From: Convolutriloba macropyga
Lineage: Eukaryota
NCBI RefSeq assembly: GCF_964194025.1
Contig: NC_134482.1
Location: 7,874,001-7,938,000, forward strand
Length of the DNA stretch: 64,000 nucleotides
Reading direction: 5' to 3'
Shown: positions 8,364 to 43,300 of the stretch, in pieces
How the letters are laid out: every line of letters begins with the position of its first letter
Numbering within the stretch: the first letter of the stretch is position 1
Notes under the pieces: generated by a model
Databases searched by the model: none
Told to the model about the DNA's origin: nothing
The model's input: only the letters and a program-made list of their open reading frames with translations
Made by a program: the position numbers and the translations under genes

Positions 8364-8571
8364 CCCGGATTGAGACCGAATGGTTAACTTGAAAGAACTT
8401 GCAAGTTTCTTGCAAAAGATGGTTAACTTGTAAGAACTTTTAGTCGAATGGTTAACTTGTATGAACATGCAAGTTTTTGGTAGAAAAACTTGCAAGGCGA
8501 TGCATCGCCTTGTAAGAACTTGCAAGAAATTTTCAACTTCTTAAAAGTTAACCATTCGACCTCAACCAGGG
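8364..8571. mobile_element. CACTA/EnSpm-like MITE (GAATGGTTAACTT motif family)
   Basis: The left end cccggattgagaccgaatggttaactt matches the reverse complement of the right end, ccctggttgaggtcgaatggttaactt. TA/TA flanks. Internal repeats of tggttaactt and aacttgcaag. Confidence 0.85.
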
Positions 8572-9463
8572 TAGATTTACATAATCTTGGTTATCTTGAT
8601 TAATGTAAAAACTTATGTTCTTATGGATTTCATGTTAGCACAATCAACTACTGCTGCTCTCTATTCATCTTTCCTAGGATTCATCGCCCCGGCCCGCAAT
8701 AAATTCCTAGAACTCTTTCCTTAGTTTTTTATGGCAAAAATTTTTTTAGTTTTTTAGCGCACAACTTGAAACGTTCAATTGTTGTAAGTCAAAGCTAAAA
8801 TAATTGAGTTCAACTTTTAATTTAAGCGTTGAATTTACCTAATATTTTTGCTTAGCATTGCAATTTTTTTTGAATTTTTAAGATCTGCACGAAGTTCAAA
8901 AGCACAAAATTTTGAGTGTTTAACGCTAAACTACCCGCAAAATTAAGATCAACCATAATTTTTCAGGAAGTTTATATCAGATCTAATTTTAGATAATCAC
9001 AACTTTTTAGGATCTACGCTTAAGAACGCAAAACAATCTAATATCTACGCTTAGAAATTCAAAGTCATCTAGAATATTTTCTAAGAAACGCAAAATTATG
9101 TGATAACTTCGTTTAGAAATTCACCGCAAATCTAAGATATTTTGCGGTGAATTTACGTCTGTAAATTGAACTCATTCAACTACAATTATTTAAGAAATCT
9201 GCGGTGATTTTGCTAACGTTTCAAAGCTAGTTACCGCTTTTTCGATGCAATTTGAGACAACTTTTGCACTGTTAACAGCATTTTCATACTTCTTCTTTCT
9301 TACTTATAGCTTTTTCAGACTGAAAGTTTATCATGCTGCTGTTTAATTGCAGACATTTTTTTCCGAAATTTGTCATGAAATGTCTATAATATGACATGCT
9401 CAGAGTACTAAAAAGATTCAAAATGCAGATTTGGAGTACTGTGATTCAGCACTGTTTTACAAG

Positions 9464-9971
9464 CCCGTGTTGCTCACCAAATTTTTTCTTAGCAATCATA
9501 CAAAGTCATATATGATTCTTAGAAACAATACAAAGTCATATATGAGTGGTATGAAAATTTGACAATCATACTAAGATCACTAAAAAATTGATTGATGCTT
9601 TCAAATACAGCACAATAGTTCAAACCAACAAGTCTTACCATACTTTCAGCCAAAAAGTGAACAAACGAGAAAACGGTTGTCTGAATGGATCGGTTTTTAT
9701 CGTTTTTTGGGTTCACCCTATCCTTGTGCCTTTATAGGGACTGCTCCGCTTCTGTTGTGTGTTTCGCTTGCCTTTATATTTTATGGTGCTACATTTCTTT
9801 TGTTAATGGTTTGTTTGTTTTAGTACAACGATCGTTTATAATTTCTTAAAAATCTTACAAAGTCATATATCAAAAAAGGAAATCTTATTAAGATCATGCT
9901 AAGATGTAGTCTATGATGTGTATGGTATCATATATGCTCTTAGTACAATTAGAAAGAAAACGCTACTCGGG
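9464..9971. mobile_element. CACTA-like non-autonomous element (AAGTCATATATG motif)
   Basis: cccgtgttgc ... gctactcggg termini, AG/AT flanks, repeated acaaagtcatatat. Confidence 0.55.
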
Positions 9972-10166
9972 ATGTTAGTAATATTCGGCTTTTTACATAA
10001 TTTTGGCAACATTCCACGACCCGGACAGAGTAACAAAAACTTACATTTTTCCGTATTTGGCGACCACCTGTTTTTCTATAATGTCCCATAACTGTTAGCT
10101 TAATCTCTGAATAAAGCTGTTCCCTGCGCTAGCATCGAATCAACTCTTTTTTTCTCAAATAAGATA

Positions 10167-10772
10167 TTAGCAGAATGAGCAAAAATCTAAGATTTTTTTG
10201 ACTGTTGGCAAATTATCCCTGAATTGCTGCAGATCCCATTCTCGTTTGTGGAACATAATGTCCATCGACGTTGAAGGGACATTAAAACTATTTCCCCATT
10301 CCAACAATTCTATCTCGCATCGCGTTTTTTTATTGCTCAAAGGCTTATAAACAGGCAAAATTATCCAATCCAAAAAACTGAAGTGTTCCGATTTCAAAAT
10401 CATCAAACATTCCACCTTCAAAACTCTCAAGGAGTCTGAAAATAATTCTTCGTAGTCAATTAATGGCCCCACTTCACTTCGAGGTCTGTCATGTAGTTTC
10501 AAATGGAGCCAATAAAATTTCCAATTAGATTCGCTCATAAAACTTAAAGCGCTCTCAAATTGCACCAGACAATGTTCATTAGTAGATGAAGCAAACAACA
10601 GGTAACATTTGTCCAATATGTCTCTGATTGTGGTGCATGTGGCTCTCAAACGCATAATGTCTCCAAATTGAGGAAGAGATTCGGCGAAATTTGTCGGCTT
10701 GGGATGTAAGTATATCATGTATTGGCTTATAAATTGCCATAGATTTAGCGGTAAGTCGAAAAAAGCTGCCAT
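10167..10772 (-). CDS. F-box-like protein, probably 3'-disrupted (possible pseudogene)
   Basis: ATG-initiated 201-aa ORF. The N-terminus FFDLPLNLWQFISQYM...DIMRLRATCTTIRDIL fits the F-box pattern L.LP.e....I...L...dl..l..tC......i, followed by Leu-patterned segments (LRVLKVECL). The sequence after the A-run near 10195 reads like a frameshifted continuation. Confidence 0.6.
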   Translation of the reverse strand: MAAFFDLPLNLWQFISQYMIYLHPKPTNFAESLPQFGDIMRLRATCTTIRDILDKCYLLFASSTNEHCLVQFESALSFMSESNWKFYWLHLKLHDRPRSEVGPLIDYEELFSDSLRVLKVECLMILKSEHFSFLDWIILPVYKPLSNKKTRCEIELLEWGNSFNVPSTSMDIMFHKREWDLQQFRDNLPTVKKILDFCSFC

Positions 10773-12224: not shown

Positions 12225-12647
12225 TTGAGCGTGCTTTCAGTTTTATAATGCATGTAATGTTCGCTTTGCAGCAAAAAGAATGGCTACCGCCATTTTTATC
12301 CTAGTTGAATTCAGCGGATGTTTCTGATGATTCCAAGGAATTTCAAAAAATGAATGTTGTCTGATTTGAATCGCACTTAAGAAAAGTAATTCACGCACAA
12401 ATTTCTTGAAAAATTTTGGCGTGTTTGAGCGTGCTTTTAGTTTTTGTATTTGAGCGTGCTTTTAGTTTTTTTAACGCAAGTAATGTTTGCTTTGCAGCAA
12501 AAAAAATGACTACCGCCTTTTTTATCCTAGTTAAGTTCAGCGGATGTCTCTGATGATAACAAGGAATTTCAAAATGTGAATGTTGTCTGATTTCAATAGT
12601 ATTTAAGAAAAGTATTTCACGCACAAATCTATTTAAAAATTTTGGCG
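12225..12647 (+). repeat. Diverged tandem duplication, 2 x ~200 bp
   Basis: ttgagcgtgcttt...aaaaattttggcg occurs at 12225-12421 and 12450-12647, with an extra short copy of the unit start between them. Confidence 0.85.
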
Positions 12648-15420
12648 AGAAATTCAAAGCAAAATAGTTATATGTCTTTGAGGAAATTATTTCAAATTTC
12701 AACTTGATAAAGAATTATACCAACAAAAATTAACTATTACATCAAAGTGTCAAAAAATATTTCTTTAATTTAATTAAAAATGTCTTATGTTTAGCTGTTG
12801 CAAAATTTAAATACAAATCCCTCAACAGAAAAACACTTTTTCTAACGAAAAGAGTATACTTAATTTTATGCTTAAACTTAAATTTTGTTGTAATTACGCG
12901 TTCAAATATATGGGAACGATTTTCATTCAATTTTCAAAGTTCATCCACTTTTTCGTAGCTTCGTCTATCACTTTGGAAAATGCAGCACTGACTGAACAAT
13001 TGCAATGAAAACCAGCAAGAAACTTTTTGTTCAATAATTTTTTTGTGTTTACGGAATCGCAGAGTTGTCTTCAGTTAATTTGATAATGTAGGTCACTCTA
13101 GATGGCATTTCCTTTTATGTAAGTTTCATGCTCATTTTCAAATTCATTGTCAATCACATAAACAAACAATTCAATATCACTCAAAATGTTGCAAGAACTT
13201 CTCCTTTCTGCACGGTAGAAATACGACTAAAAAATTAGCGCAGCGGGCTCAAAAAAATTTTGTTTAATCGCAAGATTTTTCGAATTTCACTACAAAACGA
13301 ACAATGATTATTTTAATTGGACATGCATTTTTGAAATTGACATACGGATAATATTTGACTTAGACTTGCATCTACAAAAGAAGCAATGCGTCTCACAAAG
13401 TGATTCTGCATTGTTAATTTAAACAGGATTCGGACGTAAATGCAAACGAATAATATAGTCTAGTACATAATTGCCGACTGAATGCTTTTTCAGTCTGAAA
13501 TTATGCTTTGAATTTGAATTTTTATTTTTCGCTATTGAGTTAAACCATAAAAACTCTATAAGTTGATTTAAGTTCTACATAGCTGTCGTGTTTTGCCAAT
13601 ATTGAGACTCGATGAACCAAAATATATAAATTTTGGTTCATCGGGTCTTTTGAGCTTGTACTGAAAATTTATAAATAATTATCAGCCTAGACATTTTGTT
13701 TCAATCTTTTTTATTTATTTTTTATTTATATTATAGGAAAACCCAGATATTCTTTTTATTTGTTCAATACTCCGTTTCTCAGTTGGATGGAATTCGAACA
13801 CATCTTTCGTTTACTTTTTTGAAAATGAAGTGCAATTTCGAGCTCATTGTAATTGAAAACTGCGAGAAGAATTTCCTGTTCGATTAATTAGTCGAACTCA
13901 ATTTCTTATGAATTAGTCATTAAGCAATTACTTTCGAAGATTATGTGCATTTTTGAAAGTTTTGTTTCTCTTCCTCATTTGTCAGAGAAAAAAATAAAAA
14001 AAAAGTCGCAAGTGGTGCTCACAATTTTTGAACGATAAATGTGGGGTTCTTTTATATAATGAAGCTTTTGATTTCGTTGAGATCTTATCTCAGAGTAATT
14101 AAATCTTTCAATAATCTGAAACAAATAGAGAAACATTTAAAGTATGATCAAGAAAGGTTTATTGTAAACTCAATTTTTTGTACATTTTGGTCTCCTCCAG
14201 ATTCGTTTAAAACTTTTTCGGGGAAATGGCTTACTTTATTACCCAAAAATAACTCAATCAATCTGTTTAAAGTCTATTTGCGGCACTTCTGTCAAGGGTC
14301 TGCATTAAATGTAAAAAAAAGAATGCCCCGTTTTGATTCTGTCATCTTTGCTACAATGTGGAACGCTGAACTTTTTGACCAGGGTATCTTTATTACCCCT
14401 GGTTACCCGGACCCTAGTGCCATAGTAAAGCAGGACAGATTCATGATATCCCAATAGTAGAGGTCTATATCATTACTGTTTCACGGTATTCTAACAGTAT
14501 TTAAAAAGTTTTTTCTCGAAGACTTCGCGGAATAAGCTCAAAAGTCAATTTTTTCATAATTTTGTCAAGCACAGTCGATTTTGATTCCTTTCTCCGCTCA
14601 TACAAAAATATTAGTTCAGTTTGGAATTTTCGGGAAAAAATTAAAATTTCGGGCGATGCACAAACATTATACTTGTGGAACGCGCGGGAAGTTTGCAATA
14701 CCCAGGGGTTTTGGAGAATAAAGCCAGTAGATAACAGACAAAATCAGTGCAAAAACAGTTGATAACCAGTTAAACTAGCTCGAAAACCAGTTAAACTCTG
14801 TTACTCGATAAAACTTTTGTTAGGAATCCTTTAACTGATTGCTTTCTTCAAACCAAACTTTTTTCTCATGCAGTATTTACAAAAAAAAGAAGAACCAAGA
14901 TGTTCACAGATGGAATATTTTATTTCCAGATCTTTTTACATTAAATACAATCATTTATCAGCAAGCTTGTATAAATTTAACCATCTGGTTACACGTTCTG
15001 ATATTATGTTTTTGTTGGCTTAACATTAATAAATTGGGGGTGCCTAAATTTCGGTTTTATAGGACTGGGGGATGGGGGCTCCAGAGGAAATGATCTTGTT
15101 TCGAAACAAAGGCAATTCTTCTGTTAGAATTTGTTCTCTCCTTTATGTACATTTTTTAAGGTTCCTTTCATTCATTCGATCAGTTTACTATAAGTTTTGA
15201 GATTACACTGACAATCAGAGATAAAACGCATTCTGTATTGTGTATCGAGTAACTATAAAAAACAAAGTTATTTGGCTCGTATTCCCCAGTGATTCCTCCA
15301 ATTTCTGGTCTCAATTCAATTGGCAGGCGTCCAGCAGAGGTCAAAAGATCGCCCATATTTGGCCCAGATTCGATGAGACGAAAATTGATGCCTACAAAAT
15401 TTCACTGTAAGAATTCAAAA

Positions 15421-15504
15421 TCCAGGTTGAGAGGTCGACCATGTGAAAAAGAAATATAATCGAATTGATGGTGTTGGTTTCATAAGTCGACCTCTCAACT
15501 AGGG
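15421..15504. mobile_element. 84-bp CACTA-like mini-MITE (second diverged copy at 16817-16897)
   Basis: TIR tccaggttgagaggtcgac / gtcgacctctcaactaggg. It lies inside a locally duplicated segment that starts ggcccagattcgatgag (15361 and 15750). Confidence 0.7.
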
Positions 15505-15802
15505 CTTCAGGTGCGAAGACCCACGCAAACACTTTTTTATGATCATGGAAAGGTCCATAACAAGACCTGCCAGATGTTGGCAAGATCTGGCAAAAATTGT
15601 TGGCGACTTGCACAAATTGGAAACGGTTGGCGTGGGTTCACAGCCTTCAGAAGTACCCCATTTTTTGTGATATTAATTACAGGGAATCAAAAAAAGACTC
15701 AATTAAAGATGTGTTTCGTGCATTTATAAAGTGGGTTTCCAAGATTTTTGGCCCAGATTCGATGAGGCGAAAATTGATGCCTGGAAAATTTTACTGTAAG
15801 AA

Positions 15803-16807
15803 CCCGGATTGATGTCTCATAGATTCCCATCGATGGATCATGATTATTCCAGAGAAAACCATCGATGGATCATTGAATGCCCCCTCCCCCATTACCATTT
15901 AACACTGGGCGTAGAAAATTCATAGGGTCTGTCATGAAAATGCAACGATTTCCTCCGGTTCATAAAAGAATTTTCATGATTTTATTATAATTTCTTTTGG
16001 TTCATAGATTATTTATTTTTGGATTTACAACTAATTTCACTGGATTATAGTAACTGTAATTATTTTTCCATGAGTTTTTCTGTTTCTCTGATTCATGGAA
16101 ACTTCTCATGTACTTACCAAGAAGTCCTCTGGATTATTAGAACTTCAGAACTGCTAATCATTGCTTTTCAAAGGACACAAAAATCTCATCTATCGGAAGC
16201 ATCCTATAAAACTCATTGAGGCAATAAAGTTTTTTTTCTCTCCTAAATAAGAGCCAGATCAAAATTTTTTGCAAAATTAGAAGACACTCGAAGCAGTTGA
16301 TCTACGGTCGGGTTTGGACGCGCTGGTATGTGGGGGGGGGGGGGGGGGGGGGGGGGTTAGGGGGGTATTAGTAGTCTCATAGCATGTCAATCCTCAAACA
16401 GTTTTCCAATTGTATATTGTCGTTGTTGGCGAATTAATCCGTTGTCGTCCATTAGCTGTTTCGTAGCTTGTCTGTCACCCCTTTTCAACCCCCCCCCCCC
16501 GCCCAGACGAGTATTGTGTGCAGCAGCTAAAGGAATTCGATGGCAAGATGAGGCACTTAACTTAGAGGCACGTTACCAGATTTTCGGACAAATTTTTGCA
16601 AACATGTGAATTTTCGAAAATTTCATTAAACTATTTTGTCATGAAAGTTCTATGATCCATCAATGGATTTTCAATTTTCATGATTTTTCTATGATCAATC
16701 GATGAGTTTTTAGTTTCAATGAATTTTGTCCGAGCCATCAAAGAAATATTAATGATTATGAAAGAGCAATGATCCATCGAAGAAAACCTCTCGAAACCCA
16801 ACCCGGG
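15803..16807. mobile_element. CACTA-like non-autonomous element (ATCGATGGATCA motif)
   Basis: cccggattga...catcgatggatca versus tgatccatcga...caacccggg. It interrupts the second copy of a local duplication; the empty site is visible at ~15407-15417. Confidence 0.8.
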
Positions 16808-17712: not shown

Positions 17713-17912
17713 NNNNNNNNNNNNNNNNNNNNNNNNNNNNNNNNNNNNNNNNNNNNNNNNNNNNNNNNNNNNNNNNNNNNNNNNNNNNNNNNNNNNNNNN
17801 NNNNNNNNNNNNNNNNNNNNNNNNNNNNNNNNNNNNNNNNNNNNNNNNNNNNNNNNNNNNNNNNNNNNNNNNNNNNNNNNNNNNNNNNNNNNNNNNNNNN
17901 NNNNNNNNNNNN
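17713..17912. other. Scaffold gap (200 N)
   Basis: Run of exactly 200 N; contiguity across it is unproven. Confidence 1.
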
Positions 17913-18303: not shown

Positions 18304-18348
<45 letters not shown>

Positions 18349-18570: not shown

Positions 18571-18627
<57 letters not shown>

Positions 18628-19780: not shown

Positions 19781-20761
19781 CCTTCGTCGAGAATGAACAG
19801 TTATCTTGTAGGAATCTGGCAGATTTCGGCAGATTCTTACAAGACGATGCAACTTCCATCCAAAATTTCTGGCAGATTCTCACAAAATAACCATTTATCT
19901 GCCGGATTTCCATAGGAAAACCATTTTTTGCCAGATTCCTACAAGATAACCATTTTTCTGTGAGACTTTTGCAAGATACTCATTTTTCTGTCAAATTCAT
20001 ACAAGATAACCATTTTTACTCCATATTACTGCAATATAACTATTTTGTTGCCCTGGTCTCGCAAGATAACTAATTTCGGCCAGATTAAACAAAGATAGAA
20101 AAATTTTGTAAGACTCCTAAATACCTTTTGGGAATGCTTTCTTCTCTGGGAATTCTTTTATAAAAACCATAAACTGCTGTGCAATACCATAAATCTAATT
20201 GAGCTTGCAATGTGTTCTCGCATTAATTAGTTAAAATATTTGAAAAATTGAAGAAATAAGAAGATGCGCTTGTCGTAATTATTTGTGTTTCATTGAAGCA
20301 CAATAAGTATGACATGTACTCTACGTGAAATATAAACAAACGAAAATTTTGGAAATGTAACTTGGTAAACTTGGTAACATCATATCAAGCAACTTTTTTT
20401 ATCAAACACTGTTTAATATTTTTAAAAAATTCTTTGCGCTCTTTTGTCAAATCGACACGACAACTTGACTGGAAACAATTTTCTGAGAAAATAAATTGAG
20501 CTGATTAGCCATTTTTATTCAAATAAAATGCAGCTTAACCGGAACGAGCCCTTTAATCAAAATCTAGCAAGAAAAACTTTTTTGCCAGAATGTTGCAACA
20601 TTCTGCCAGATAATCAAATTAAGGGCAGATTCCACCAGATAAACCGTTTTCTGCCAAAATCTTGCATTTTTATGATTCTTCTGCTACATTTTGGAAAATA
20701 ACCATCTATCTATCAGAATCTAATAGATTCTTGCAAAATAACCATCCCGTCTCAACTATAG
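19781..20761. mobile_element. CACTA-like non-autonomous element (CAAGATAACC / TGGCAGATT motif)
   Basis: at|ccttcgtcgagaatgaacagttatcttgtaggaatct matches the reverse complement of the right end, at|ctatagttgagacgggatggttattttgcaagaatct. AT/AT TSD. ~30-bp internal repeats. Confidence 0.7.
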
Positions 20762-22433
20762 ATGTAATTATCTTTGTTTCTAACCTATTTATCTCTATAC
20801 GTGTCTTATATCAACTAAAATACTTTCAACGCTTGAACTGGAACAATTACAAAATATTTAACTTGTTGATGTAAAGTTACGTTTCTAAATTATATCTTTT
20901 CGATTGGAAAATAAAATTTAATTTAATTTGAGTGAATAGCAGTACTGATTTTGAATGAGTTCATAAACATTTTCGATTCGAAAATGAATAAGAAAGTTTT
21001 ATGACCACGTACAGAGCAGTTTTTAATTTGGTGTGAATCCGAAAAAAAAATCAACAAGAAATTTCCCAATTATTTCGACACAAAAACTGCATGCACAATA
21101 ATTTTTGGTTTTTGTTTTTTTTAATTGTTTTTTATAAATTCTTAACAAATTTTGTTTGTTTTTAAATCTCATAAAATGTTAGACAGTTGCTTACCCTGTT
21201 GTATTACATTTTAATTAGTCTATTTTAGTAACTTTACTTCAACCCGGAATATGAAAGGATGGGGTTAAATCAGAGTTTGAAATATCTCACAAAAGAGGAC
21301 TTAATTTGAACTGAAAAAAACCTATTTACATTTCTGAACAGAAAACCGATTCTCAATCGGCGGCTATTTTCACAGACGAAGATTAAATTTATGTTTCTGA
21401 AGGACTAAAGGGCAAAATCCTATGAACTATAAAATGTAGTTCAGAGAAAAACGAGAAGTTGAATCATAGTCCGAATGAGAAGGATTCCGGATCAGACTGG
21501 GTTCAAATAATAATCAAACTTTTTGCAGATTCCGATTCAGCGTCCAGACTCAAACAAAGACCCAGTCATTTCAGAATTTGACTTAATCAGACTCTAAATA
21601 GGATAACGTTCTGTGATTCTTTATAATTCAGTTATGAATTAGCCGTAGAACTAGGTGCACCAGGAAAACATTTCGTATATTACCATTTTTTCTTTGTTTC
21701 GAAGTTAAGAGCTGCGCAATTGTCGACACTGTTATCAAATTTTTAGTTACACTAAAACTAAATACAAAAGAAAGCCTTCTTTTGAGGTTGTGCTTTTTCT
21801 TGTAGTATTCTTCTAATCAGAGTGCAGGCAACGAGTGCCTTTAATTTATATCATCATGAATGTTTCTTCTCATTTTTTATTTTTTATCTAAACGGTATGT
21901 GAAAAATGCAATAAAAAGCGACAAAATGCCCTGAAATAGTGTAAGAAATGCGCTGAATGATCGGCAATTTACTTAAATAACATCAGCGCATTTCATACTA
22001 ATCGAATTATCGCATCATATGATTAAATGAAATAAAACGAATTTCAGGCAAGGAAATTGGTGATGAAAACGAGGAAATGATTCAAGAACTGCTGCGCAAT
22101 TTGAGGTATATCTTACAAAGTGTTGCTGATAGAATCCGGAAAGTTCAAGGTAGAGTCAAAATTCAAGCACGAAAACTTGACTCTGTCCCAAAAACTGCTT
22201 GAAAACGGTTACGGCAAAAAGTAATCGCAAAACAACTGCATTCAATTTATATCAAGATTCTTTTTGTCAATACATAACTTAAAGTTTGAACACAATTTAC
22301 TGAAATACTTTAGAATGATTTTTGAGATCCTTTTTTGGTGAAAATTCAGAGCATTCAGTGTATTTCGGTTTATTCAGAGCATTTCTTACAAAAAAAACTG
22401 CTCCTAAAATGGCTCTCGCATCTCAAACAGGGC

Positions 22434-23330
22434 CCCGGGTCGAGAGAAAAATTGAAAAATATGTAAGATAAGCGATGAAAAGTTAGTTTTTTCACCGCAA
22501 ATTTCGTACATAATTTTGCGGTGAAATGCGGTGAATGCGGTGAAAATATGTAAGTTCACCGCTATAGCAAGCGGTGATCTTACAAAAATTCAACACAATT
22601 CATCGCCAAAATATGTAATTTCACCGGCCTTACAAGGGTTCGAACCTCTCACCTCCTGCATGGCAGTCACTTCTTCTTCCACAGCGCTATCCCTCACAAA
22701 CTTCTAGTATTTTTGTTTTGAATATAAATCAAATTCACTTTAATTTCTGTAAAATAAGCGCGGTGAATTTTTGTAAGATTTGCGATTTTTAGCGGTGAAA
22801 TTACATATTTTAGTGGTGAAATGTGGTGATTATTTGTAAATTCACCGTTTACTCTAGTGGTGAAATTACATAAATTCACCGCTTTGAAAAAAGTGTCAAA
22901 AACATGTAAGATAAAGGGGTAGTTTTAGTGGAAGGGTAAATCTAACATTTCCATCCTTACTCCCCATTAATTTCACCACATTCTTTGCTGATCTCACACA
23001 GTTTTACAAATTTTTTCTAAGCGGTGAATTTATGTAAGTTCACCACTAAGCTGAGCGGTGAATTTATGTGATTTCACCGCATTCACCGCTTATCTTACAT
23101 AATTTGCACAAGTTTTTTCGAAGCGGTGAATTTGTGTAATTTCACCGCTAAATTCAGCGGTGAATTTATGTAATTTCACCGCTACTAGGCGATAAAGGTT
23201 TTTTTTCACCGCATTCACCGCCTGATTTATGTAATTTCACCGCATTCACCGCTTACCTTACAAAAATTTCCGCATTCGCCGCTTAACTTACATAATTTTG
23301 CGTTGAAGAGCGGTGACACCTCGACCCGGG
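22434..23330. mobile_element. CACTA-like non-autonomous element (GCGGTGAA / TTCACCGC motif)
   Basis: gc|cccgggtcgag ... ctcgacccggg|gc: perfect 11-bp TIR and GC/GC TSD. Dense gcggtgaa/ttcaccgc motifs in both orientations. Confidence 0.9.
22626..22694 (-). pseudogene. tRNA-Gly(GCC)-derived sequence with Pol III A/B boxes
   Basis: The minus strand reads TAGCGCTGTGG (A-box-like)...CTGCCATGCAGGAGG...GGTTCGAACCC (perfect B box). It is colinear with eukaryotic tRNA-Gly(GCC), but the acceptor and anticodon stems do not pair. Confidence 0.6.
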
Positions 23331-26600: not shown

Positions 26601-28323
26601 AGTCAGGTTATTTTCACCCTAAGTGATATTTGATATGAGCACACGAAAAATAGACTCCGTATGATTGTAAGTGTTTTCATTGCAAACTTACTGATTATTT
26701 CTTTCGCTTAAAACTAAACAAACCGACGATTTCGTGCGGTTCAAAACAAAACTTACTTCAAAATTTTATATTTTCTTCTGCGTTTGAAAACCCAACGCAG
26801 GGGCGATACCGAAGAAAAAGGGGAAGATGTTCGTCGTTTTTGCTTGGCCAAAACCTAGCATACCGACGATTTCCTGAGCTTAAAATTGAAAATTTTTACT
26901 TTAGGGCATATATAGATTACCAACCTTCGGATTTGCTGAACTCTCAAACTAACGCGTGAAAACCTGTACTTCACCCTCACCGCTACTTCCTGTCTCAATA
27001 CTTTACTCAACACTCCATAGAAGATCAAATTCATAAGACTTGTGAAATTTCCAGCGCACAGAAACCACAGAGTCAAAAAGAACTGCAACGCCGGTTTGTT
27101 CTGAATTGGTCCGTTGAAAGCCGCGAGAAACTGTTTCACAGCAATTGGAATAAATATGATGACGTAGATAATAGCCGTTACTGAAAAGGGTAATGAGCTT
27201 TTCAGCACCGAATATGAAAACTTTGCTTCCATTTCGTGTGAACTGATTTCATCAGACGGGTTCTGGGCTAAAGTAGATATTCGTTTATACTGAACGTAAG
27301 CGCGATACAGAATGAACCCAAACACAATTTGTGAAGCTAGAATAATGATCGTGAACGTTGCATAGAATGGAACTACGACAAATAAAGCTTCTTTGGATAA
27401 TAAACATTTTTGACCATCGTCCGATATTTCAAACCAGTATTTTGGCTGACATCCAGCGCTAAACTTTTCATCAGGTTCCTTTTAAACTGTTTTATTGAAA
27501 AATAATAGTCAAATATATTCACACATTGGTTTGTCGTACATTAGCTTTCGGGCACACATTTTTCGATTTTTGCATAAACTGTTTGTCAATAATTATGCAT
27601 TTAATCAAGACAGCATATTTTATGTTTCACCCGAATACAGCGAGACTTAACCCCCCCCCACCCCCCCCCCCCCCTCCAACAATTATTACATGAGATCTCA
27701 TAGAATGTTGAAAGTGGATGCATCATCTCACTGGATTTTTGGGACCTAATCTTTCAAGATAAATGATCACGCTAAAATGATGTTACTAACTGACCATCAA
27801 CTTACAAGACTTCATTACTGTCCAATGTCCCCAATTAGACAATTTTCATGTCCCCAAAATTGGCAAATTTCAGTTCTAATCTTATAACAAGGGTTTATTT
27901 ATACTCAATTCTTTGGACATTGACTACGTAATGTTTACTCGATCACCATTCGTTCTAACCCTAGTTGAGACGACCGAACCAAAATGGCAAAAAATTTGTT
28001 AAAAATTTTCGATATTTTTGGTTTTAAACGTAAGAAAGCGTCGGTACCTTAGGTGTGTTCGGTAATGTCCGTTTCGAACGCAAAAAAGATTCGGTATGTT
28101 CGGTTTTAGAAGACTTGGTACATTCGGTATTTAAACGTAAGAGATCGTCGGTATGTTCGGTTTTAGACGTGAAAAGTTGTCGGTTTTTTGCAGAGGAAAC
28201 TTTGATTTTTCTGTTCATAATGTGCTCATACGTTGTGTTAGCGTTCCTTATGCACGAATTCTAAACGAACTTCATAAAGATAAATTCTGAAAGATTGTGC
28301 AAAATTATTGAAAATTCTTTTTT

Positions 28324-28358
<35 letters not shown>

Positions 28359-31300
28359 GTCTAATTGAACGAATACCTTTTTCTTGGTCATTTTTCAATT
28401 CGAAAATGTAACATACTTGTTGAGCATTGAAAAAAAATTCTGCTGAATAACTAAAATTCACTGAGTGTTGACACAGTTTATTGTAGTTTACAAGCAGAGT
28501 TATTGACAGATGGTTACGTTTGAAATCGAACTTACCGAAGGGTTTTTGTTCTCACTGCCGAACTAATCTGCGGTTAAAACACACAAGATAAACGTTTACG
28601 GTATTTCTCTCAACAATACCTAATCTCATACATTTGAAAAACGACGATACCAAATCTCTCTTACGTTTTAAAAGTGAACCTACCGAATCTCTCTTACATT
28701 TGAAATATATGTGCACGATAACTATATTTCTTATATGTTGTTTAACGATAAAAGCCCAATGTCTGATTGCATTCATTTTTTGCGCATCAAGACAAAATCG
28801 GAAAAAAACATCCAAAAACATGCGATAAACGGCATCAGAAAAAATGCTTACATCTCTTTATTTTCTCAAAACTACTAAAAGTTTTCTGATCTTTATCTGA
28901 TTTTCTGTTTTCACGTCAAGAGTAAGTTAAAGTTGTTTAATAAAAGTCACTGCTTCAAAACCGTTAAAATAATATGCTGTTTCAATCATTTTGAAAAGAC
29001 CTCAATGGCTAAGCTGTGCAAGAAGTGTAACACAGCGTTACCTTGCCGCAAGTTCAATTCGGAGGCCAGCTGATAAATTTCAATATTTCATCCAAGACTC
29101 TGATTGGGTGTGAAATTTCAAATTTTAGCAGTGAAGTTTAATCACTTCACTGCTAAAATATGAAATTTCACAACCAATCAGAGCCTTGGATGAAATATTG
29201 AAATTAATCAGCTGGCCTCCGAATTTAACTTACGGCAAGGTACCGCTGTGTTATACATCTTGCACAGCTTAGCCATTGAGGTCTTTATTTGAGAGGTGCT
29301 TAATTAAGAGGTGAATTCTGAAAAATTCACCACATTCGCCCATATTTGTCAACAGAAAAAAATCTTAAGTAATCTTAACGGTGAGCCTAGAAATGATTTT
29401 TAAACCAATTACCATATAATTGCTGCATTCCAAGTTAGGGAATTATTGAACTCAATTTTTCTGATGTGGTCCTCCACAGTTAGTTCCGGGTTATGAACAC
29501 AAAAATGTAGTTATAACCTCATCCTGTGTAATTCTCAAAATCCAAAACACTTATTTGCACGATAATCGGCAATGGTAGCATTATATTTTCAATTCCCTGT
29601 GACCACTCATTTAAACGTTAGATGTCAAAAACAGGTATAGACCAGACCGAACAGACCTATTTCATTTATGGGCCAAACCGAGCAGCGCAACCCAAAATTT
29701 GTCCAGACTATGAGCTTTCCGCTACCCACTGTCCGCCAGGAACCCCCAATATGGGTAGAACTGGGTCAGGAACCCTCAATATGGGTAGATCTGGGTTTAG
29801 CAAAAAACGCTGATTTTTTTACAATTCAAAGAATTTGAATTGTATTGGGGCGCTGTCTTTTTTTTTTAAGATTTGTTCACCCATTTTAATGATTTTTGAA
29901 GTCAAATTGGAGTAGTGATTTTGGTCACGCCGAAACAGGAAATGGAGCGAAAAAGCGAGTGGTTTTGCGGCGTGAAATTTTTTCGCTCTAAATTTAAAGT
30001 AGAGTGAGAAGACGGTGTTTGAACAAAAATTCGGTTTCTCGGTAGTGGTTTTTTGTTCACATGCGGCAATTTCACTCTGATTTTTACTGTTTTTTCGATT
30101 TTATAGATAGGATTTTTTTTCTAAATGGTTTTCATAATCAATTCACAGCTCATTCTAGGCCTAGTTTTTTGTTTGAATTAAATTTTCATTTCTCGCTAGT
30201 GGTTTTTTTTGTTCACGTGCGGCATTTTGATATTGATTTTCTGTTTATTTCTTATTTTTTTGTTCTGATTTTTTTAAATGTTTTTCTCAATTCACTCATA
30301 GTCCATTCCAGGTCTAGTTTTTCTGTTTAGTCAATGATAATTCTTTGAATTGTACGTCAGGACTTGTCCTGCTATGTTTTTTAATTTCATAACAAAATTA
30401 CAAAAGGAAACTGAGTATTCCCTGAAAATGTAGGTTTTGTTGTAAGTGACTGGAAATAGGTCGGAGCGTGCATAGAGAATGAGGGTGATAAGAGCACCAG
30501 AAGGCCACGTGATCACGTTTAGAATGTAGAACAACTTCTGTTTGTTCACAGACGTGGTGTGGAGGTTCAACAGAACACAACAAAGCAGAACGAAAGACCT
30601 AAAAAATCTAAGATTTTCAATATTTTACCCCCCTCCCAATCACCCAAATTTCGCAACCATATCCGAGAACCATAAAAGTCTCAGAATCAATAGATAGAGT
30701 TCCTGAATTATTTTTTTCCAAAATTTGACATTCACACCAGTTTTAGCTTTCGGGAAGAGAAATGTGACGCAAACGCAAATTATGCAAATTTAACTTGTTA
30801 GAATATCGATCAAACTATAGTCTTAAACTTAGTGAGAATTAGAAAGAAAGTTTGACTTACCAGATTAGAAAGACAAGCAATATGACTTCGATCAAAGAAA
30901 TTATATAAATGAATCGTCAAGAAATGGCGCTGAGAATCAATATTCGGTTTAAATTGGTGAATCTAGATAACTATTATTAGAGTTAGATTAAGTGATGTAA
31001 AATCTTCCCAGCATGTATTAAATGATGATGATATCTCCGGAAGTGTGAATGAATTCTTAGAAAAGTGCAAATGCATTCCATTTATGGTTCCCTTTGCGAC
31101 TGATTTGCAGAAGCAAACCATATTGGGTAACCCTTGCTACCCCCACTATAAATCACGGTGCTAAGATTAGTTTTGTATCTTGACTTTTTCACACTGATAA
31201 TGGGTATATATACAGCTGATTGTTGAGTCCTTTTTGATCCGCAAACTCAAATCACCATCTTGATCTAATAATCAGATCTCTCCTGTAAATCTCTAAATTC

Positions 31301-37300: not shown

Positions 37301-40300
37301 ATATGATTTTACCAGGTCTTTCCCGTTATAGCCCCAATGGATTCATAGCCTCCATGATTGTATATTTACTATGATTGGGAGGCTCTAGCTTATCTGACTA
37401 CTAAGGTGGGGGTGGGGTGGGGTGGGGTGGGGGCTATAAGGGAGAAACCCATTATAACAGTAGCCGTTTAAAATTGTCTACGTTTCATTTTAGCGGTGAT
37501 GATCCACTTCTACAGAAATGTCTAAATTTTTGACCGGCAATCGTGCGTTCCTGTGAGAAAAATAACTGAAATTGAACATTGAAATTGAGCTGGAAAAAAA
37601 CGTATCTGAAAGACATCAGTTAAAAAAGCTTTGCAGTAGGTTCAAAGATGCATGCAACCCAGGTTAAATTCCAAGACAATATCAAGTTCTGATGTTCTTA
37701 TCTCACCACACACCAAACTTTTCTCGTGTGAATCACACAAAAATCGTGTATTTTTGGGAGAAAAGTTACACACGAAAATTTGCCCAGTTACATGATAAAT
37801 AGTGTATTTTACTCAATTCTCTCGGCCTTATTCTCATGGATTATCGCGTTATCCACACAAAAAAATGGTGCGAAAAGAACCCGATTTTTTTAGTAAAAAA
37901 TACAATTTTTTGCTGAAAAACCACACAAAATTCTCACGTGAAAACACACGATAATTCGCGTAAAATTCACATGATTTCTCATGTTTTTCAACAGTGTTTA
38001 TCGTGTGCTTTCACACAACGATTTTGTGTGATTTCTCGTGATTTCTCACATGATTTCTCATGTTTTTCAACAGTATTTATCGTGTGCTTTCACACAACAA
38101 TTTTGTGTGATTTCTCATGATTTCTCACATGATTTCTCATGTTTTTCAATAGTATTAATCGTATGCTTTCACGCAACAATTTTGTGTGTTTTTAAGCAAA
38201 TAATCGTATTTTGGCACAAAAAATCGGGTTTTTTTACACTAATTTTTCCTGTAAATCCTTTTCAATTGATTCCTCTTTTGAGTGAATATCGGCCAAGGCA
38301 TAAACTCCCGAAGGAAACGCTTCATAATACGCTCATTCGTAGGAGGAAAAATTGCACGTGTGAAATCACTCGAGATGCAATTTTCACACAAAAAATTGTA
38401 TAAAGTTTGATCAAACAAGAAAAAATCATGTGATTTCACAGACGAAATTTTAAGAAGAGTGCATCGTTGATATCAGGAAGCAGAAAAATGCGCTCAAAAT
38501 TACACTGCCTGAACTTTTTCGATCGCACAAAAGTATGGGAAATGGGTTCAATTTAGTTCTGTCAGAGGCCGCAATTGTCCTAATGAGCATACAATGGGCC
38601 TTAATGGTCCAAATGGGCATACTTTTTTCATTTGAACTGATCACAACCTAAGACTCAAATAGCTAAAAACAGTTGCTTATGAAAAACGTTCTACGCTTAT
38701 CTCCTGTTCCAGCAACAAAGCCATAAGTATTTCATTTTAAACGTACTGCTAAGATTGTAAAAAAATATCTAATTTTAGTTCCGTATTATGCATTACAACT
38801 AAATTTTAGATCGAAATATTGCTTCACTGATGACAAGTTTCAATTTTGTCATACGTTTTCCGTGCGGATGTTGAATAACAAAAATATAGGTTCAATTTTC
38901 ATATAGTTTCCCATTACAACAAACAAAAATTAAGATGTACCTCAAAAAAATCTTATTCGGGCAAGCAATTCTCGAGTCAAAAAGCTAATCTAACCCCCTC
39001 TAAGTACGACTTCTTTACTACAAAATGCGGTTTATCGGAAACCATTTGACATAAAATTGCAAATTTAGAAAGATGTTCATTTAAAATTGGATAATAAAAA
39101 TTGATAATAAGACTTGCGGAAAACGATGTTATTTAGTCATTTTAAGTTTTGCTACCTTGTAAGGCATGATATTTTTCATGTTTTAAGAAAGTCAAACGAA
39201 ACTATGTACAACGGAGACAGTTTTGTCTCCATTTTTAGTCTCGCCTCATCAGATTAAAAGTAATTTTCACTGAATGTGTCGCTGGAGACGCCAATTTTTC
39301 TAAATGAACATATTGTATTGAAAAAAAATTTTTAACGCTAGTCTCTGCTCAGAATATTTTGAGCGCGAAAGTATCGGATCAAAGACATCTTTGAGTGACA
39401 TTACTCTGATGACAGACATGGTTTATCGCATATGCGTCTATGACGCACGGAAATTTCTAGTCCCAGTGATTTGGATATTATGATCAGAGGCGGTTTGGAG
39501 AGCAAAGTTTTGATGTGAACCGAATTCAAGCGCACAAATTTGAACAAGAAAGTTTTTTTGTGTCGACCCGGACTGCACGTCAAGTCCTAATCAGAACTGA
39601 TTCAGTGAAAATGCAAATGATGCATGAGTACTGAATCAGAGCTCTGATCATGTCACCTCTTAGACTTGGCACGTCTTGAATCAAGTCTTTAGTCTAGGCA
39701 GGTCTTAGCCAAAACTTGACAATTCTTGCAGAAGTCTTGGCCACTCCTTGACAAGTCTTGTATCAGTTGTTGAGCACCGATTTTATTGTTGGTTTGCTTT
39801 TGCTTTCGCTTAGTAACGAAAGAAGTCGCCAGTTACAGCGGCCTGCCTGAAAAATTCTCCAAAGTGAAAAAAAAGAAAACACGAGCACTTCTAAAAAGTT
39901 CACTTGATACAGAATGAAAAAAGTTCTGATATCACCCGAAGACACCAGTGATGGCCAATTTCTTTTGCCTACTCTACTTTGCCTAACTGTGCAATAATCA
40001 AGACTTGTCAAGTCTGGCCAAGACTTGACTCAAGACTTGCCAAGTCATCGTCAAGACTTGACTTAGACTTGACAAGTAAATGAGTTTGTCTTGACCTGTC
40101 TTCACAAGTCTTAAGACATGAGATAAGACGTTATCATAACTGATTTGTCGATTCAAGACTTGTATTTTACTCGAGAAGATCTGATAAAGACTTGAATTTC
40201 GTTCAGGGGAGCCTACAGTAGCACAACAGTGAGGATAACGGTCTTGGTTGCGGGAGTTGAGGAGTCTATATTACCCAATTGGAGACGACAATTACCTCAA

Positions 40301-43300
40301 CTGCTCACAGGTAGCCAGTTTTTTTGACGGCCTGATTAGGTTAATTTGGTTTAAGATCTCAAACGGGATATTTATCTTCTTGAGATTGAGAAGATTTTTG
40401 CACTTCCAATACCTCCCCACTATATCAATTTCAATCGATAAACCAGTGCTGCTTTCTCTAATCGGAGAATCACCATCAATATAGATAAGCATCCATCGCA
40501 CCTACCCAGGTTAAGGTCCAGACCAAATTTGAGCTATGATCAGACCCACTTGAACGCACACCCGTGTGTTCCCAGACCAAAATTACACGGTCCTGACAGC
40601 ACGGTCCTGTCGAGTACAAAATAGTTGGGGCCATGGTCTGATTTTGGTTTGATCAGAGGTCAATTCGGTCTGGAAGATCTGATCAGAGGTCACGTTGTTC
40701 TGAAAAGTCTGATCAGAGGACACTTCGGTCTGGAAAATCTGATCAGAGGCGGATTCGAATGCACTTGAGTCTGATCAGAGGCCGTGTCGAGTGCACTTGA
40801 GTATCGGCAAATTTATTCATTCGCATTTCTTTATTTTTTTCTAATGAATAGGCAATAAAGGCTATACCACGAGCCAGAAAGAGATATATGTTCTGTCCAG
40901 ACTCATTTGGAGTCCGTCGCTATCGATGAGAACGATCCAGGACTAAAGAGTTCAACCGCTAACAAGTGGTCAGTCCCTTTACAAAAACGAATAGCAAATG
41001 CAGATACTGACGTTTGTTATAAATAATAGTCAAACTTTAATTATGGTGCCAGTGAAGTTAGGGCATAGTTTTCTATTTAAAAATTTCTGTAAAATTTTTA
41101 TTTCACAAAAAAAAAACTTTTCATTTTGAGCTGACTTCACTGAATTTTCTACTGGAGATATGGGTTTTTATGTAATGCATATATTGTAAAGATCTTAGCC
41201 TCGTGCGTGTTCAAATGTAGTCTCTGATCAAACCCATCTGGAAATTCTGAACAGAGGTCAGTTCACTTTAAAAATTCTGATCATAATCTGTTTATTGTCT
41301 GGTCATTGGTCTGACTCTTAATCTGAATCGTGCCATAAGCGCACTATAATCTAGACCATATTCTGTGTACCGTCTGATCAGAAGTTATCTTGATCTGAAA
41401 TGTCTGATCAGAGGTAATTTGGTCTGGAAAGTCTGGTCAGAGGCCAATTCAGTCTGGATAGTCCCATCATAGCTCAATTTGGGTCTGAACCTCAACCCGG
41501 GTTAGTGACAGGAATTTGTTGTCAAAATAGCAAAACTATACATATTGGATCAAGATTCACATTGTAATTGACCATTGTAAGTGCTCTTGGTGTGAGGATT
41601 GATTCACGCTATCTTGTAGTGTTGGTTACAGAATTAAAAGTTTGCGCAGTTTTTGAAAATCACTTTTTGAAAAAATTTGTTATTGATTAATGTCTATCGT
41701 TGCACTTCTTTTTAGGATATATTTTTTCACCACTATTTGGATAGGTAAAGTGCATTGGGTTGTGGGCGAGGAGAGATTCGACAAAGGCTTGAACGCCTAC
41801 TATTGCATCTTTTCTGGATCAACTCCTCTATTAATCAACTCACCCATTGAATTCAATCACCCAATGAAATTTTGTGAACTGCATATATTATAACAATATT
41901 TAAGGTCTCGTGCGTGTTTAAGTATAGTCTCCGATCAGAGGTCACTTCGGTCTGGAAGGGCTGAGCATAAGTCGGTACGCTCTGAAAGGTCTGATCACAG
42001 TCTGCTTGTAGTCTGGACAATGGGCTGAATTCGAGTCTGATCATAAGCACACTATAGTCTGGACCATATTCTGGGTATGATCGGATCAGAAATCATCTTG
42101 GTCAGGGTAGTCTGATCAAAAGCCATTTGGTGTGGAAAGTCTAATCAGAGGTCATTTTGGTCTGGAAAGTCTGACCAGAGATTGTTTAGGTCTAGATAGT
42201 CTGATCATAGCTCAATTTGAGTCTGAACATCAACCCGGGGAAAATTTGCAGAGCAACAGGAGCAATGGGTGTTAATAGAGTAATAACGAATAAAAGTGTA
42301 ATATTTCGCTAATTTCATTACTTGAATATATATTTGGCTATATTATATTTTTAAAATTTGTAGAAAATGTTGCGACAAATTCAATACTCAAATCAACGAT
42401 ATTTTATTCTACTTGCTTTTTCTTATTTTGTGCTTTTTGTGAGAGAGCATTGGGATCAGTTTTTCCTTTATCCCACTCACAAACTCCCACCAGTAAAATT
42501 TCCCTCACGACTGACAAACCCACAATGAAAAATGAGCTAAGTTATTAGAGACGATTCTTCAGGCATCTCATTCTTACGTTGCCAATCTTACAAATTCTGC
42601 AGAGTCCGCATTTGCGAGCACGAGTGACGACATTTTGTCACCAATTCTTGCGTGGGAGAAACATGGTTAAATTGTGGACAACGATTACAAAAAAACTGCG
42701 GACATGTTTAAAAAGTTCCGTCACTGATCTTGGAAAAATTATCTTTTTTAGGTCATCAATGTCCAAAATTTGCGAACATAGGTATCATCATCACTGCACT
42801 TTATTTTTTATTTTAATTCACAATCAAAATTTTGACGGATTAAATTTAAAATTATCCCTCACTTCACTTTGATAAGAACTATCCCACTTATTCCCCTTTA
42901 ATCAGTTTCAGAAGCCTTGAGTATTTAAATGAATAACTTAAGTTCAGCCCACTTTAAGTTAAGTTTTGAACCCTTATTTTATGTTCAAAACTTTGACGGA
43001 TTAAAACTATTATTACCCCTCATTGCCTTTTGATAAGAAAAACCGATTATTTCCCACTTTTTCTCCCTTTAATGTTTTCAGAAGCCTTTACGGACTAAAC
43101 GAATAATTATCCCTCACTTTAATTTCAACCCACTTCAAGTTAGTTTTTGAACCCTTTATTTATGTTCAAATTTTTGACTGATTAAAATTATAATTACCCC
43201 TCACTGCATTTTGATAAGACGATTCATTTAAATCCCACTTTTTCTCCTTTTGATCATTTTCAGAAGCCTTGCCCGGAAAGTAGTTACTTTAGCGCGAACG

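What the first reader, a model, noticed from the sequence alone, without database searches (positions are those of the whole stretch)
8364..42239. A zoo of unrelated-looking MITEs sharing CCC...GGG termini and 2-bp TSDs, each with its own motif array
Seen: at least ten elements (8364, 9464, 15421, 15803, 19781, 22434, 23732, 26617, 39567, 40505) have CCC...GGG-type ends, most resembling CCC(G/A/T)GGTYGA. Their flanking dinucleotides are TA/TA, GC/GC, GA/GA, CA/CA and AT/AT, plus one-mismatch pairs, so the TSD is 2 bp and not sequence-specific. Inside, nearly every one is filled with a different 6-12-bp motif, usually in both orientations (TGGTTAACTT, GCGGTGAA, TGTAAGAGTGGG, TCTGATCAGAG, CAAGTC, ATCGATGGATCA, CAAGATAACC). 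Known: animal CACTA/EnSpm elements have CCC termini, 2-bp TSDs and subterminal arrays bound by a second protein (TnpA-type). Inference: a modular system with a conserved cleavage terminus and many diversified DNA-binding specificities. It scatters clustered protein-binding arrays every few kb, including throughout a gene.
Basis: partly seen in the sequence, partly recalled or inferred. Interest (0 to 1): 0.7.

Follow-up and report, generated by a model that had tools for sequence, protein, structure and literature searches.

The report
CCC-ended MITEs, two-base target duplications
This stretch is packed with small non-coding DNA transposons whose ends and two-base footprints fit the already described animal CACTA-like (CMC/"TRC") type, so it is ordinary, apart from a short motif and a ~30-base spacing that their internal repeats share.

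Summary
The elements are real. The end motif CCCNGGTYRA occurs 13 times where 0.7 are expected. For seven elements both ends could be fixed without looking at the flanks. Four of these have identical two-base flanks (TA, GC, GA, AT; chance 0.08 each, p≈0.001), and the other three match in one of the two bases. One element (15803-16807) sits in the second copy of a local repeat. The first copy is an empty site that differs by exactly the element plus 2 bases. Eight elements carry internal short-motif arrays, six of them beyond all 200 shuffles.

CCC ends with a non-specific 2-bp duplication are the published signature of animal CACTA-like ("TRC", CMC superfamily) transposons. MITEs with 2-bp duplications are already a catalogued class (m2bp). 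No transposase lies in the window, so membership rests on DNA features only.

Several families are related (8364/19781; 26617/27959; 22434/23732/21929). Seven or eight share a TGTAAGA core, and array spacing clusters at 30-34 bases. This argues against many unrelated binding specificities.

15421 is part of a larger repeat. The ends of 9464 and 26617 are weak. 40505-42239 is composite. Copy number, partner element and organism could not be tested.

Verdict: a new member of a known kind, of modest interest.

The parts
8364..8571 (.). E1: 208-base MITE with flanks TA/TA. TIR is CCCGGATTGAG.../CCCTGGTTGAG... It carries TGGTTAACTT x4 and the palindrome AACTTGCAAG(TT).
   Evidence: Inverted repeat I7. 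Best right end found flank-blind. Motifs. Hairpin z = -9.75.
9464..9971 (.). E2: probable 508-base element with flanks AG/AT. Ends match 8 of 10. A 16-mer ACAAAGTCATATATGA is repeated 30 bases apart.
   Evidence: The right end ranks only third in the flank-blind search.
15352..15504 (.). It serves as the empty site for E4.
   Evidence: Self-BLAST. Alignment with U2.
15803..16807 (.). E4: 1005-base element inserted in the second copy of U (15741-15802 plus 16808-16897), flanks AA/CA. ATCGATGGATCA lies twice near the left end and three times, inverted, near the right end.
   Evidence: Removing it leaves exactly +2 bases relative to U1..
19781..20761 (.). E5: 981-base element with decayed ends (CCT.../...TAG) and flanks AT/AT. 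It is related to E1 and carries a CAAGATAACCAT array with period 30/60.
   Evidence: Both ends align in register with the E1 ends..
21929..22432 (.). Ends are CCCTGAAATAG.../CCCTGTTTGAG... with TGTAAGAAATGC inverted near both ends. E6 abuts its last base.
   Evidence: Inverted repeat I19. Sequence..
22434..23330 (.). E6: 897-base element with flanks GC/GC and an 11-base TIR CCCGGGTCGAG. GCGGTGAA occurs 20 times in both orientations.
23732..24490 (.). E7: 759-base element with flanks TG/TA and TIR CCCGGGTC(A/G)AA. It carries TGTAAGAGTGGG in both orientations and a 66-72-base tandem array.
26040..26528 (.). GGTCTGG(C/A)CAATGG array ending in a right end TCATCCTGGG|ta. No left end was found.
26617..26906 (.). 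E8: possible 290-base element with flanks CA/CA. Its ends are weak. Its interior is related to the element that starts at 27959.
   Evidence: (not the top-ranked end).
27959..28700 (.). Element with left end CCCTAGTTGAGACG and CGTAAGAGATCGTCGGTA repeats. The right end was not found and the end coordinate is approximate.
   Evidence: (I8, I12).
39567..40208 (.). E9: 642-base element with flanks GA/GA. The near-palindrome CAAG(T/A)CTTG is arrayed in both subterminal regions at 32-base spacing.
40505..41501 (.). E10: 997-base element with flanks TA/TT and a TIR of 41-47 bases. TCTGATCAGAG plus GGTCTGGAA units repeat every 30 bases.
   Evidence: Inverted repeat I9..
41502..41911 (.). Unrelated repeat that starts exactly at the right end of E10. 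A second copy lies reversed at 53050-53513.
41870..42239 (.). E10b: the right half of a second E10-type copy, ending in TCAACCCGGG|ga.
   Evidence: (I10).
14375..14384 (-). Solo end matching CCCNGGTYRA. Others lie at 37658-37667(+), 45330-45339(+), 49494-49503(-) and 54010-54019(-). No partner ends were identified.
17713..17912 (.). Assembly gap. It lies outside every element and was left untouched.

Best explanation
The region is a nest of non-autonomous cut-and-paste DNA transposons. They are MITEs and somewhat larger deletion derivatives, 0.2-1 kb long. They belong to a few related lineages of the CMC superfamily, in its animal CACTA-like ('TRC'/Mirage-like) branch.

Shown:
- They share a roughly 10-base end, CCCNGGTYRA.
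- They are flanked by a 2-bp target duplication of any sequence, with a preference for TA.
- One has an empty site in the window.
- They insert into and next to each other.
- Most carry short, often dyad-symmetric motifs repeated in the subterminal regions, typically 30-34 bases apart.
- Many families share a TGTAAGA core.

Inferred:
- A CMC DDE transposase encoded elsewhere in the genome cuts at the CCC/GGG ends with a 2-base stagger at the target.
- The phased subterminal repeats are binding sites that assemble the transposase, or an accessory protein, on both ends, as TnpA sites do in maize En/Spm.
- The family-specific parts of the arrays come mostly from divergence and tandem expansion of these subterminal regions.
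For: - End motif: 13 occurrences against 0.70 expected.
- TSD: flank-blind ends for six elements plus E5 by homology give 4 of 7 perfect 2-base flanks against a background of 0.08 (p=0.0012). The other three match in 1 of 2 bases.
- Empty site: E4 has one that differs by +2 bases.
- Target preference: TA lies next to 5 of 18 ends against 6.5% background (p=0.005).
- Arrays: they exceed all shuffles and are subterminal and inverted in E1, E4, E9 and E10.
- Spacing: peaks at 30-34 bases in E2, E4, E5, E6, E9 and E10.
- Shared core: TGTAAGA occurs 31 times against 11.2 expected in the window, and 20 times against 1.6 expected inside the elements.
- E1 folds as a hairpin with z = -9.75.
- No coding capacity or transposase domain was found.
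- Literature: CCC ends with 2-bp direct repeats define animal TRC/CACTA elements (PMC1636069, PMC4298943). CMC duplications are 2-4 bp (PMC4482050). CMC MITEs with 2-bp duplications occur in insects (PMC6004678). The MITE class 'm2bp' is catalogued in Diptera (10.1101/2020.11.22.393231, PMC10138862).
Against: - No autonomous element or transposase is in the window, so the superfamily assignment rests on ends and duplication length alone.
- Only 64 kb could be examined. Most families are seen once, and the TSD statistics rest on seven elements.
- The published Aedes TRC end (CCCAGTCAAC) only resembles the consensus found here.
- Several published CMC MITEs start with CAC, not CCC.
- That the arrays are binding sites is an analogy and was not tested. 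Tandem expansion alone could produce them.
Confidence: 0.7

Rival explanations
1. They belong to a still unclassified transposon lineage that happens to share CCC ends and 2-bp duplications with CMC elements but uses another transposase.
For: The 10-base consensus CCCNGGTYRA was not found in any transposon paper by word search.
Against: The two diagnostic DNA features coincide exactly with the published animal TRC/CACTA signature (PMC1636069, PMC4298943). No other described superfamily combines them.
Confidence: 0.15
2. They are Tc1/mariner- or pogo-type MITEs that duplicate TA. The non-TA flanks would be decayed or the ends mis-set.
For: TA is the commonest flank: 5 of 18 ends, with E1 TA/TA and TA on one side of E7 and E10.
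Against: GC/GC (E6), GA/GA (E9) and AT/AT (E5) are perfect non-TA pairs at ends that were fixed flank-blind or by homology. The E4 empty site shows an AA target.
Confidence: 0.06
3. They are piggyBac-related MITEs, which also have CCC...GGG ends.
For: piggyBac-type MITEs with CCC ends exist, for example in corals (PMC2872659).
Against: None of the elements is flanked by TTAA. For example, E1 has tgttta|...|tagatt and E6 has cagggc|...|gcgtta.
Confidence: 0.02
4. The internal arrays are many independent, diversified binding specificities, each read by its own accessory protein. It concerns what the arrays do, not the superfamily, so its confidence is separate from the others.
For: The family-specific parts of the motifs differ and are often dyad-symmetric, as sites for dimeric proteins are: AACTTGCAAGTT, TCTGATCAGA, CAAGWCTTG, and ATCGAT within ATCGATGGATCA.
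Against: A TGTAAGA core is shared by 7-8 families and GGTCTGG by three arrays. Spacing of 30-34 bases is shared. Several families are demonstrably homologous. There is no protein evidence at all.
Confidence: 0.15
5. These are not mobile elements but chance inverted repeats and minisatellites in AT-rich DNA.
For: Extended 40-base TIR scores exceed the shuffled null only for E1, E4 and E10. A CCC/GGG pair at 37880-38228 turns out to be internal to a longer inverted repeat.
Against: End motif enriched about 18-fold. TSD statistics. Empty site. Second copies in the window.
Confidence: 0.02

Closest known systems
Animal CACTA-related 'TRC' elements of the CMC (Chapaev-Mirage-CACTA) superfamily, e.g. 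SmTRC1, the Aedes aegypti and Tribolium TRCs (PMC1636069) and Hydra Spongebob/EnSpm-4N1_HM (PMC4298943)
   Same: TIRs begin with CCC. They have a 2-bp direct duplication with no sequence requirement, short TIRs of 10-50 bases, and internal repeats within or next to the TIR. The Aedes end CCCAGTCAAC resembles CCCNGGTCAA.
   Different: The published elements are 5-9 kb autonomous copies or their derivatives with a Transposase_21 domain. Here only non-coding derivatives are seen, and no partner could be tied to them.
Maize En/Spm and other plant CACTA elements
   Same: Subterminal regions are filled with a short motif in both orientations. In En/Spm this motif is bound by a second element-encoded protein (TnpA) (my own knowledge of the family).
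   Different: Plant elements end in CACTA and make 3-bp duplications. Neither feature is met here.
TEfam 'm2bp' MITE class of Diptera (10.1101/2020.11.22.393231; PMC10138862) and CMC-NA/CACTA-derived MITEs of wasps and ants (PMC6004678)
   Same: Small non-coding TIR elements defined by a 2-bp duplication. They are abundant in introns and gene flanks.
   Different: I could not compare sequences with those catalogues. The wasp CMC-NA MITEs start with CAC, not CCC.
Mosquito MITEs with subterminal repeats, such as Pony, and nested MITEs, such as Mimo (recalled from memory; Mimo is cited in PMC2872659)
   Same: Subterminal repeat motifs, insertion into other MITEs, AT-rich hairpin-forming sequence.
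   Different: Those families duplicate TA and are linked to Tc2/pogo-type transposases.

Membership tests
MITE / non-autonomous TIR transposon (generic) | Terminal inverted repeats, small size, no coding capacity | tested here: met
   Elements are 208-1005 bases with TIRs of 10-47 bases. No ORF of 110 aa or more lies inside them and no transposase domain is in the window.
MITE / non-autonomous TIR transposon (generic) | Evidence of past insertion (target duplication, empty site) | tested here: met
   Four of 7 elements have perfect 2-base flanks (p=0.0012). E4 has an empty site differing by +2 bases.
MITE / non-autonomous TIR transposon (generic) | Many copies per genome | tested here: inconclusive
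   Only 64 kb was available. Scans of viral and metagenome contigs found nothing relevant.
CMC superfamily, animal CACTA-like 'TRC' branch | TIR starts with CCC | tested here: met
   E1, E2, E4, E6, E7, E8, E9 and E10 have exact CCC/GGG ends. E5 and 15421 have decayed ends. Motif enrichment.
CMC superfamily, animal CACTA-like 'TRC' branch | 2-bp target duplication without sequence requirement | tested here: met
   Flank pairs TA, GC, GA and AT, with no 3-base matches. Empty site.
CMC superfamily, animal CACTA-like 'TRC' branch | Autonomous partner with the same ends encoding a CMC DDE transposase (Transposase_21) | not testable with these tools
   None is in the window. No access to the rest of the genome.
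Plant-type CACTA (En/Spm) | CACTA ends and a 3-bp duplication | tested here: not met
   Ends are CCC and the duplication is 2 bp.
Plant-type CACTA (En/Spm) | Subterminal motif arrays bound by a second protein (TnpA type) | tested here: inconclusive
   The arrays are present and subterminal. Protein binding is not testable here.
Tc1/mariner-pogo MITEs | TA target duplication | tested here: not met
   GC/GC, GA/GA and AT/AT flanks, and an AA target at the empty site.
ISL2EU (PHIS superfamily) | AT duplication within AATT, TIR starting with GG (PMC4482050) | tested here: not met
   Ends are CCC, and the flanks TA, GC and GA occur.
piggyBac | TTAA duplication (CCC...GGG ends are shared) | tested here: not met
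   No TTAA flanks.

The most novel reading that the evidence does not exclude
The CCC-ended families use two signals. One is a conserved 10-base cleavage end. The other is a set of helically phased (30-34 base) subterminal arrays built around a shared TGTAAGA core with family-specific dyad-symmetric flanks. This would make them an animal counterpart of the En/Spm transposase/TnpA pair, in which diversification of the flanks, together with an accessory DNA-binding protein, decides which family is mobilised.
Probability: 0.12. Interest if true: 0.6.

Novelty: new member of a known kind. Interest (0 to 1): 0.3.

Why it matters
For annotation, about a quarter of 8.4-42.2 kb is this one class of element. 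It should be masked and classified as CMC-type MITEs and not treated as regulatory arrays.

For transposon biology, the gain is modest. Little is known about how animal CACTA-like elements recognise their ends. A shared TGTAAGA core and a common spacing of about three helical turns, seen across families that otherwise differ, give a concrete and testable candidate for the subterminal recognition signal.

Tried and rejected
- Naming the organism:
  - The copia RT has only unnamed ENA relatives at 82-96% identity. Its nearest named relatives, at 61% or less, are from the octocoral Paramuricea clavata.
  - The 201-aa ORF has one unnamed 55% relative.
  - No tRNA or Rfam family was found.
  - The mosquito-like look of the sequence is therefore only an impression. 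The window does not look human.
- Pattern scans of public collections:
  - Three viral-contig hits were chance matches in GC-rich phage genes.
  - Two other viral scans and both metagenome scans found nothing.
- Searching papers for the end sequences as words returned only PCR primers.
- A strict 12-of-14 TIR scan and a 40-base TIR score recovered only the long-TIR elements. Poly-C/G runs swamp naive CCC/GGG pairing.
- 3-bp and TTAA duplications were rejected from the flanks.
- 37880-38228 was rejected as a class member because its CCC/GGG pair lies inside a longer inverted repeat.
- 19781-21248 was rejected as the alternative extent of E5.
- Two review or primary papers (Nene 2007; Yuan & Wessler 2011) are not held in the library.
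Full report
SETTING. The window is AT-rich (about 36% G+C) and dense in transposons. It holds:
- a copia-type LTR retrotransposon at 30798-36316, with 607-base LTRs that are 97% identical and a pol gene broken into four ORFs;
- a non-LTR reverse-transcriptase fragment at 47580-48131;
- many short inverted-repeat elements.

It has one assembly gap, 17713-17912. None of the ten claimed elements touches it. The nearest element ends are 16897 and 19781. The gap has unique AT-rich sequence on its left and an AC-type microsatellite on its right. Continuity across it cannot be decided from the window and does not affect the finding. I did not try to fill it. The sequence does not look human.

The organism could not be named. 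The copia RT has only unnamed ENA relatives at 82-96% identity, and its nearest named relatives, at 61% or less, come from an octocoral. A 201-aa ORF has one unnamed 55% relative.

End motif. CCCNGGTYRA occurs 13 times on the two strands where 0.70 are expected, and none of 100 dinucleotide-preserving shuffles reaches 13. A looser form occurs 22 times against 3.2 expected.

Element ends. To avoid choosing ends by their flanks, I searched 3 kb downstream of each left end for the best-matching inverted end without looking at flanks. This returns:
- 8571 for 8364;
- 16807 for 15803;
- 23330 for 22434;
- 24490 for 23732;
- 40208 for 39567;
- 41501 for 40505.

The ends of 19781-20761 are decayed (CCT.../...TAG). 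Both still align, in register from the first base, with the two ends of 8364-8571, to which the element is homologous over about 170 bases.

Flanks. For these seven elements the flanks are TA/TA, AA/CA, GC/GC, TG/TA, GA/GA, TA/TT and AT/AT. That is four perfect pairs against a background match rate of 0.08 (p=0.0012). In the three imperfect pairs one base of two still matches. The perfect cases do not extend to three bases.

Empty site. Independent proof of one insertion is in the window itself. A 153-base repeat occurs twice, at 15352-15504 and at 15741-15802 plus 16808-16897. The second copy is interrupted by 15803-16807. Deleting that element in silico leaves exactly two extra bases relative to the first copy: GTAAGAATTCA against GTAAGAA|CATTCA. 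So the CCC and GGG are the true ends and the duplication is 2 bp. TA is the preferred target (5 of 18 end-adjacent dinucleotides against 6.5% background, p=0.005) but is not required.

Internal arrays. They are also real.
- The commonest 8-mer exceeds all 200 shuffles in 8364, 9464, 22434 (GCGGTGAA, 20 copies), 23732, 39567 and 40505 (TCTGATCA, 16 copies).
- In 15803-16807 the 12-mer ATCGATGGATCA lies twice near the left end and three times, inverted, near the right end.
- In 8364, 39567 and 40505 the arrays are likewise subterminal.
- Many motifs are dyad-symmetric: AACTTGCAAGTT, TCTGATCAGA, CAAGWCTTG.
- 8364-8571 folds as a long hairpin (z = -9.75), as MITEs do.

CORRECTIONS TO THE OBSERVATION.
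- 15421-15504 starts with TCC and has flanks AA/CT. Its similarity to the second copy runs about 70 bases beyond its left end, so what is repeated is the 153-base unit, not the 84-base hairpin alone.
- The right ends of 9464 and 26617 rank only third in the flank-blind search. The CA/CA pair is therefore weak evidence.
- 40505-42239 is not one element. It holds a complete copy (40505-41501), then an unrelated repeat (41502-41911, with a second copy reversed at 53050-53513), then the right half of another copy (41870-42239).
- One CCC/GGG pair, 37880-38228, is a false member. It lies inside a longer inverted repeat.
- Altogether these elements cover about 8.7 kb of the 33.9-kb span.

ARE THE FAMILIES UNRELATED? 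Less so than they look.
- Relaxed BLAST links 8364 with 19781, 26617 with 27959, and 40505 with 41870.
- 22434 and 23732 share the end CCCGGGTCRA. On both arms they also share an AAAAT-N-ATGTAAG box about 28-45 bases inside.
- The heptamer TGTAAGA occurs 31 times in the window against 11.2 expected, and no shuffle reaches 31.
- Twenty of these copies lie inside the elements, where the density outside predicts 1.6. They are spread over seven families, or eight counting 21929-22432.
- In 21929, 22434, 23732 and the solo end at 49503, TGTAAGA lies 11-42 bases from the end and points inward.
- GGTCTGG is shared by 40505, 41870 and the 26040 array (18 copies against 0.6 expected).
- The commonest same-strand repeat spacing is 30-34 bases in 9464, 15803, 22434, 39567 and 40505. 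In 19781 it is 60, with 30 second. In 8364 a 29-base spacing ranks second. This is roughly three turns of the helix.
- These last points were noticed after the fact in one window and need genome-wide confirmation.

WHAT THEY ARE. CCC ends with a 2-bp duplication that has no sequence requirement are the published signature of animal CACTA-related 'TRC' elements.
- DeMarco et al. describe this for Schistosoma, for Tribolium and for a 9.2-kb Aedes aegypti element with the end CCCAGTCAAC (PMC1636069).
- Hydra Spongebob was assigned to the same group on the same two features (PMC4298943).
- The enclosing CMC superfamily makes 2-4-bp duplications (PMC4482050).
- CMC-derived MITEs with 2-bp duplications are known in wasps and ants (PMC6004678).
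- 'm2bp' is a standing MITE class in dipteran annotations (10.1101/2020.11.22.393231; PMC10138862).

The other candidates fail a defining feature:
- Tc1/mariner needs TA.
- ISL2EU needs AT and GG ends (PMC4482050).
- piggyBac needs TTAA.
- Plant CACTA has CACTA ends and a 3-bp duplication.

What is missing is the protein link. No ORF of 110 aa or more in the window has a transposase domain, and I could not reach the rest of the genome. I therefore file these as probable CMC/TRC-type MITEs with confidence about 0.7. About 0.15 is left for an unclassified lineage with the same DNA signature.

HOW THEY LIKELY WORK. Shown: insertion with a 2-base staggered target cut, mobility into other copies of the class, and conserved ends. 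Inferred: mobilisation in trans by a CMC DDE transposase encoded elsewhere, and the subterminal repeats acting as phased binding sites that bring the two ends together, by analogy with TnpA sites in maize En/Spm.

The shared TGTAAGA and GGTCTGG cores, the common spacing and the demonstrable homology between families do not favour it. A simpler reading is a few related lineages whose subterminal regions have diverged and expanded by tandem duplication while keeping a short common core. The modular idea is not excluded. I give it about 0.12-0.15.

NOVELTY AND VERDICT. This is a known kind of element, and I rate it a new member of that kind. If the genome is an annotated dipteran, some or all of these families may already be catalogued. 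I could not check that. The shared core and the ~30-base phasing are the only points a specialist might find fresh. Interest 0.3.

Scans of viral and metagenome contigs found nothing useful. Word searches of the literature for the end sequences found only primers. Two key papers were not held. Copy number, autonomous partners, the claim that the elements lie throughout a gene, and the organism remain untested.

Noticed in passing
window 30798-36316: Copia-type LTR retrotransposon on the + strand. The LTRs (30798-31404 and 35710-36316) are 607 bases and 97.2% identical. gag-pol is split into four overlapping or adjacent ORFs by frame breaks. Hundreds of 82-96% identical unnamed ENA relatives exist, so it is a high-copy, fairly young family.
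   Followed up: partly
window 28995-29286 and 52750-52972: Two near-perfect foldback repeats, with arms of 143 bases at 94% and 108 bases at 96% identity and loops of 6-7 bases. They lack the CCC-type ends and are probably another MITE class.
   Followed up: no
window 41502-41911 and 53050-53513 (reverse): A 410-460-base repeat with two copies at 72-80% identity. One copy starts exactly at the right end of the 40505-41501 element. Its nature and ends are unknown.
   Followed up: partly
window 37788-38254: Long imperfect inverted repeat holding a 79-base tandem array (2.9 copies, 94%). It contains an internal CCCGATTTTTT...AAAAAATCGGG pair that mimics the class but is not a terminus.
   Followed up: partly
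window 22627-22700 (inside 22434-23330): A segment with a tRNA-like GGTTCGAACC box interrupts the GCGGTGAA arrays. ARAGORN and Rfam find no tRNA, so it may be a captured SINE or tRNA fragment.
   Followed up: partly
window 10167-10772 (-) and 26855-27325 (-): Two candidate coding ORFs. The 201-aa ORF starts with ATG and has a 55% identical unnamed relative. The 156-aa ORF looks like the last transmembrane segments of a receptor, with an NLIFY motif, and runs into the 26617 element. Neither has a Pfam hit.
   Followed up: partly
window 15795-15803 and 22430-22434: Insertions of the class into each other. 15803-16807 landed directly after a TGTAAGAA box of the 153-base repeat. 22434-23330 landed on the terminal G of 21929-22432.
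   Followed up: partly
window 16325-16358, 16489-16500, 17024-17066, 17374-17407, 27650-27676: Several long poly-G/poly-C runs of 12-30 bases, some joined to (CA)n. Two lie inside 15803-16807. They swamp naive CCC/GGG pairing.
   Followed up: no
window 12222-12647: A 226-base unit in tandem, 1.9 copies at 88% identity. It was not examined further.
   Followed up: no
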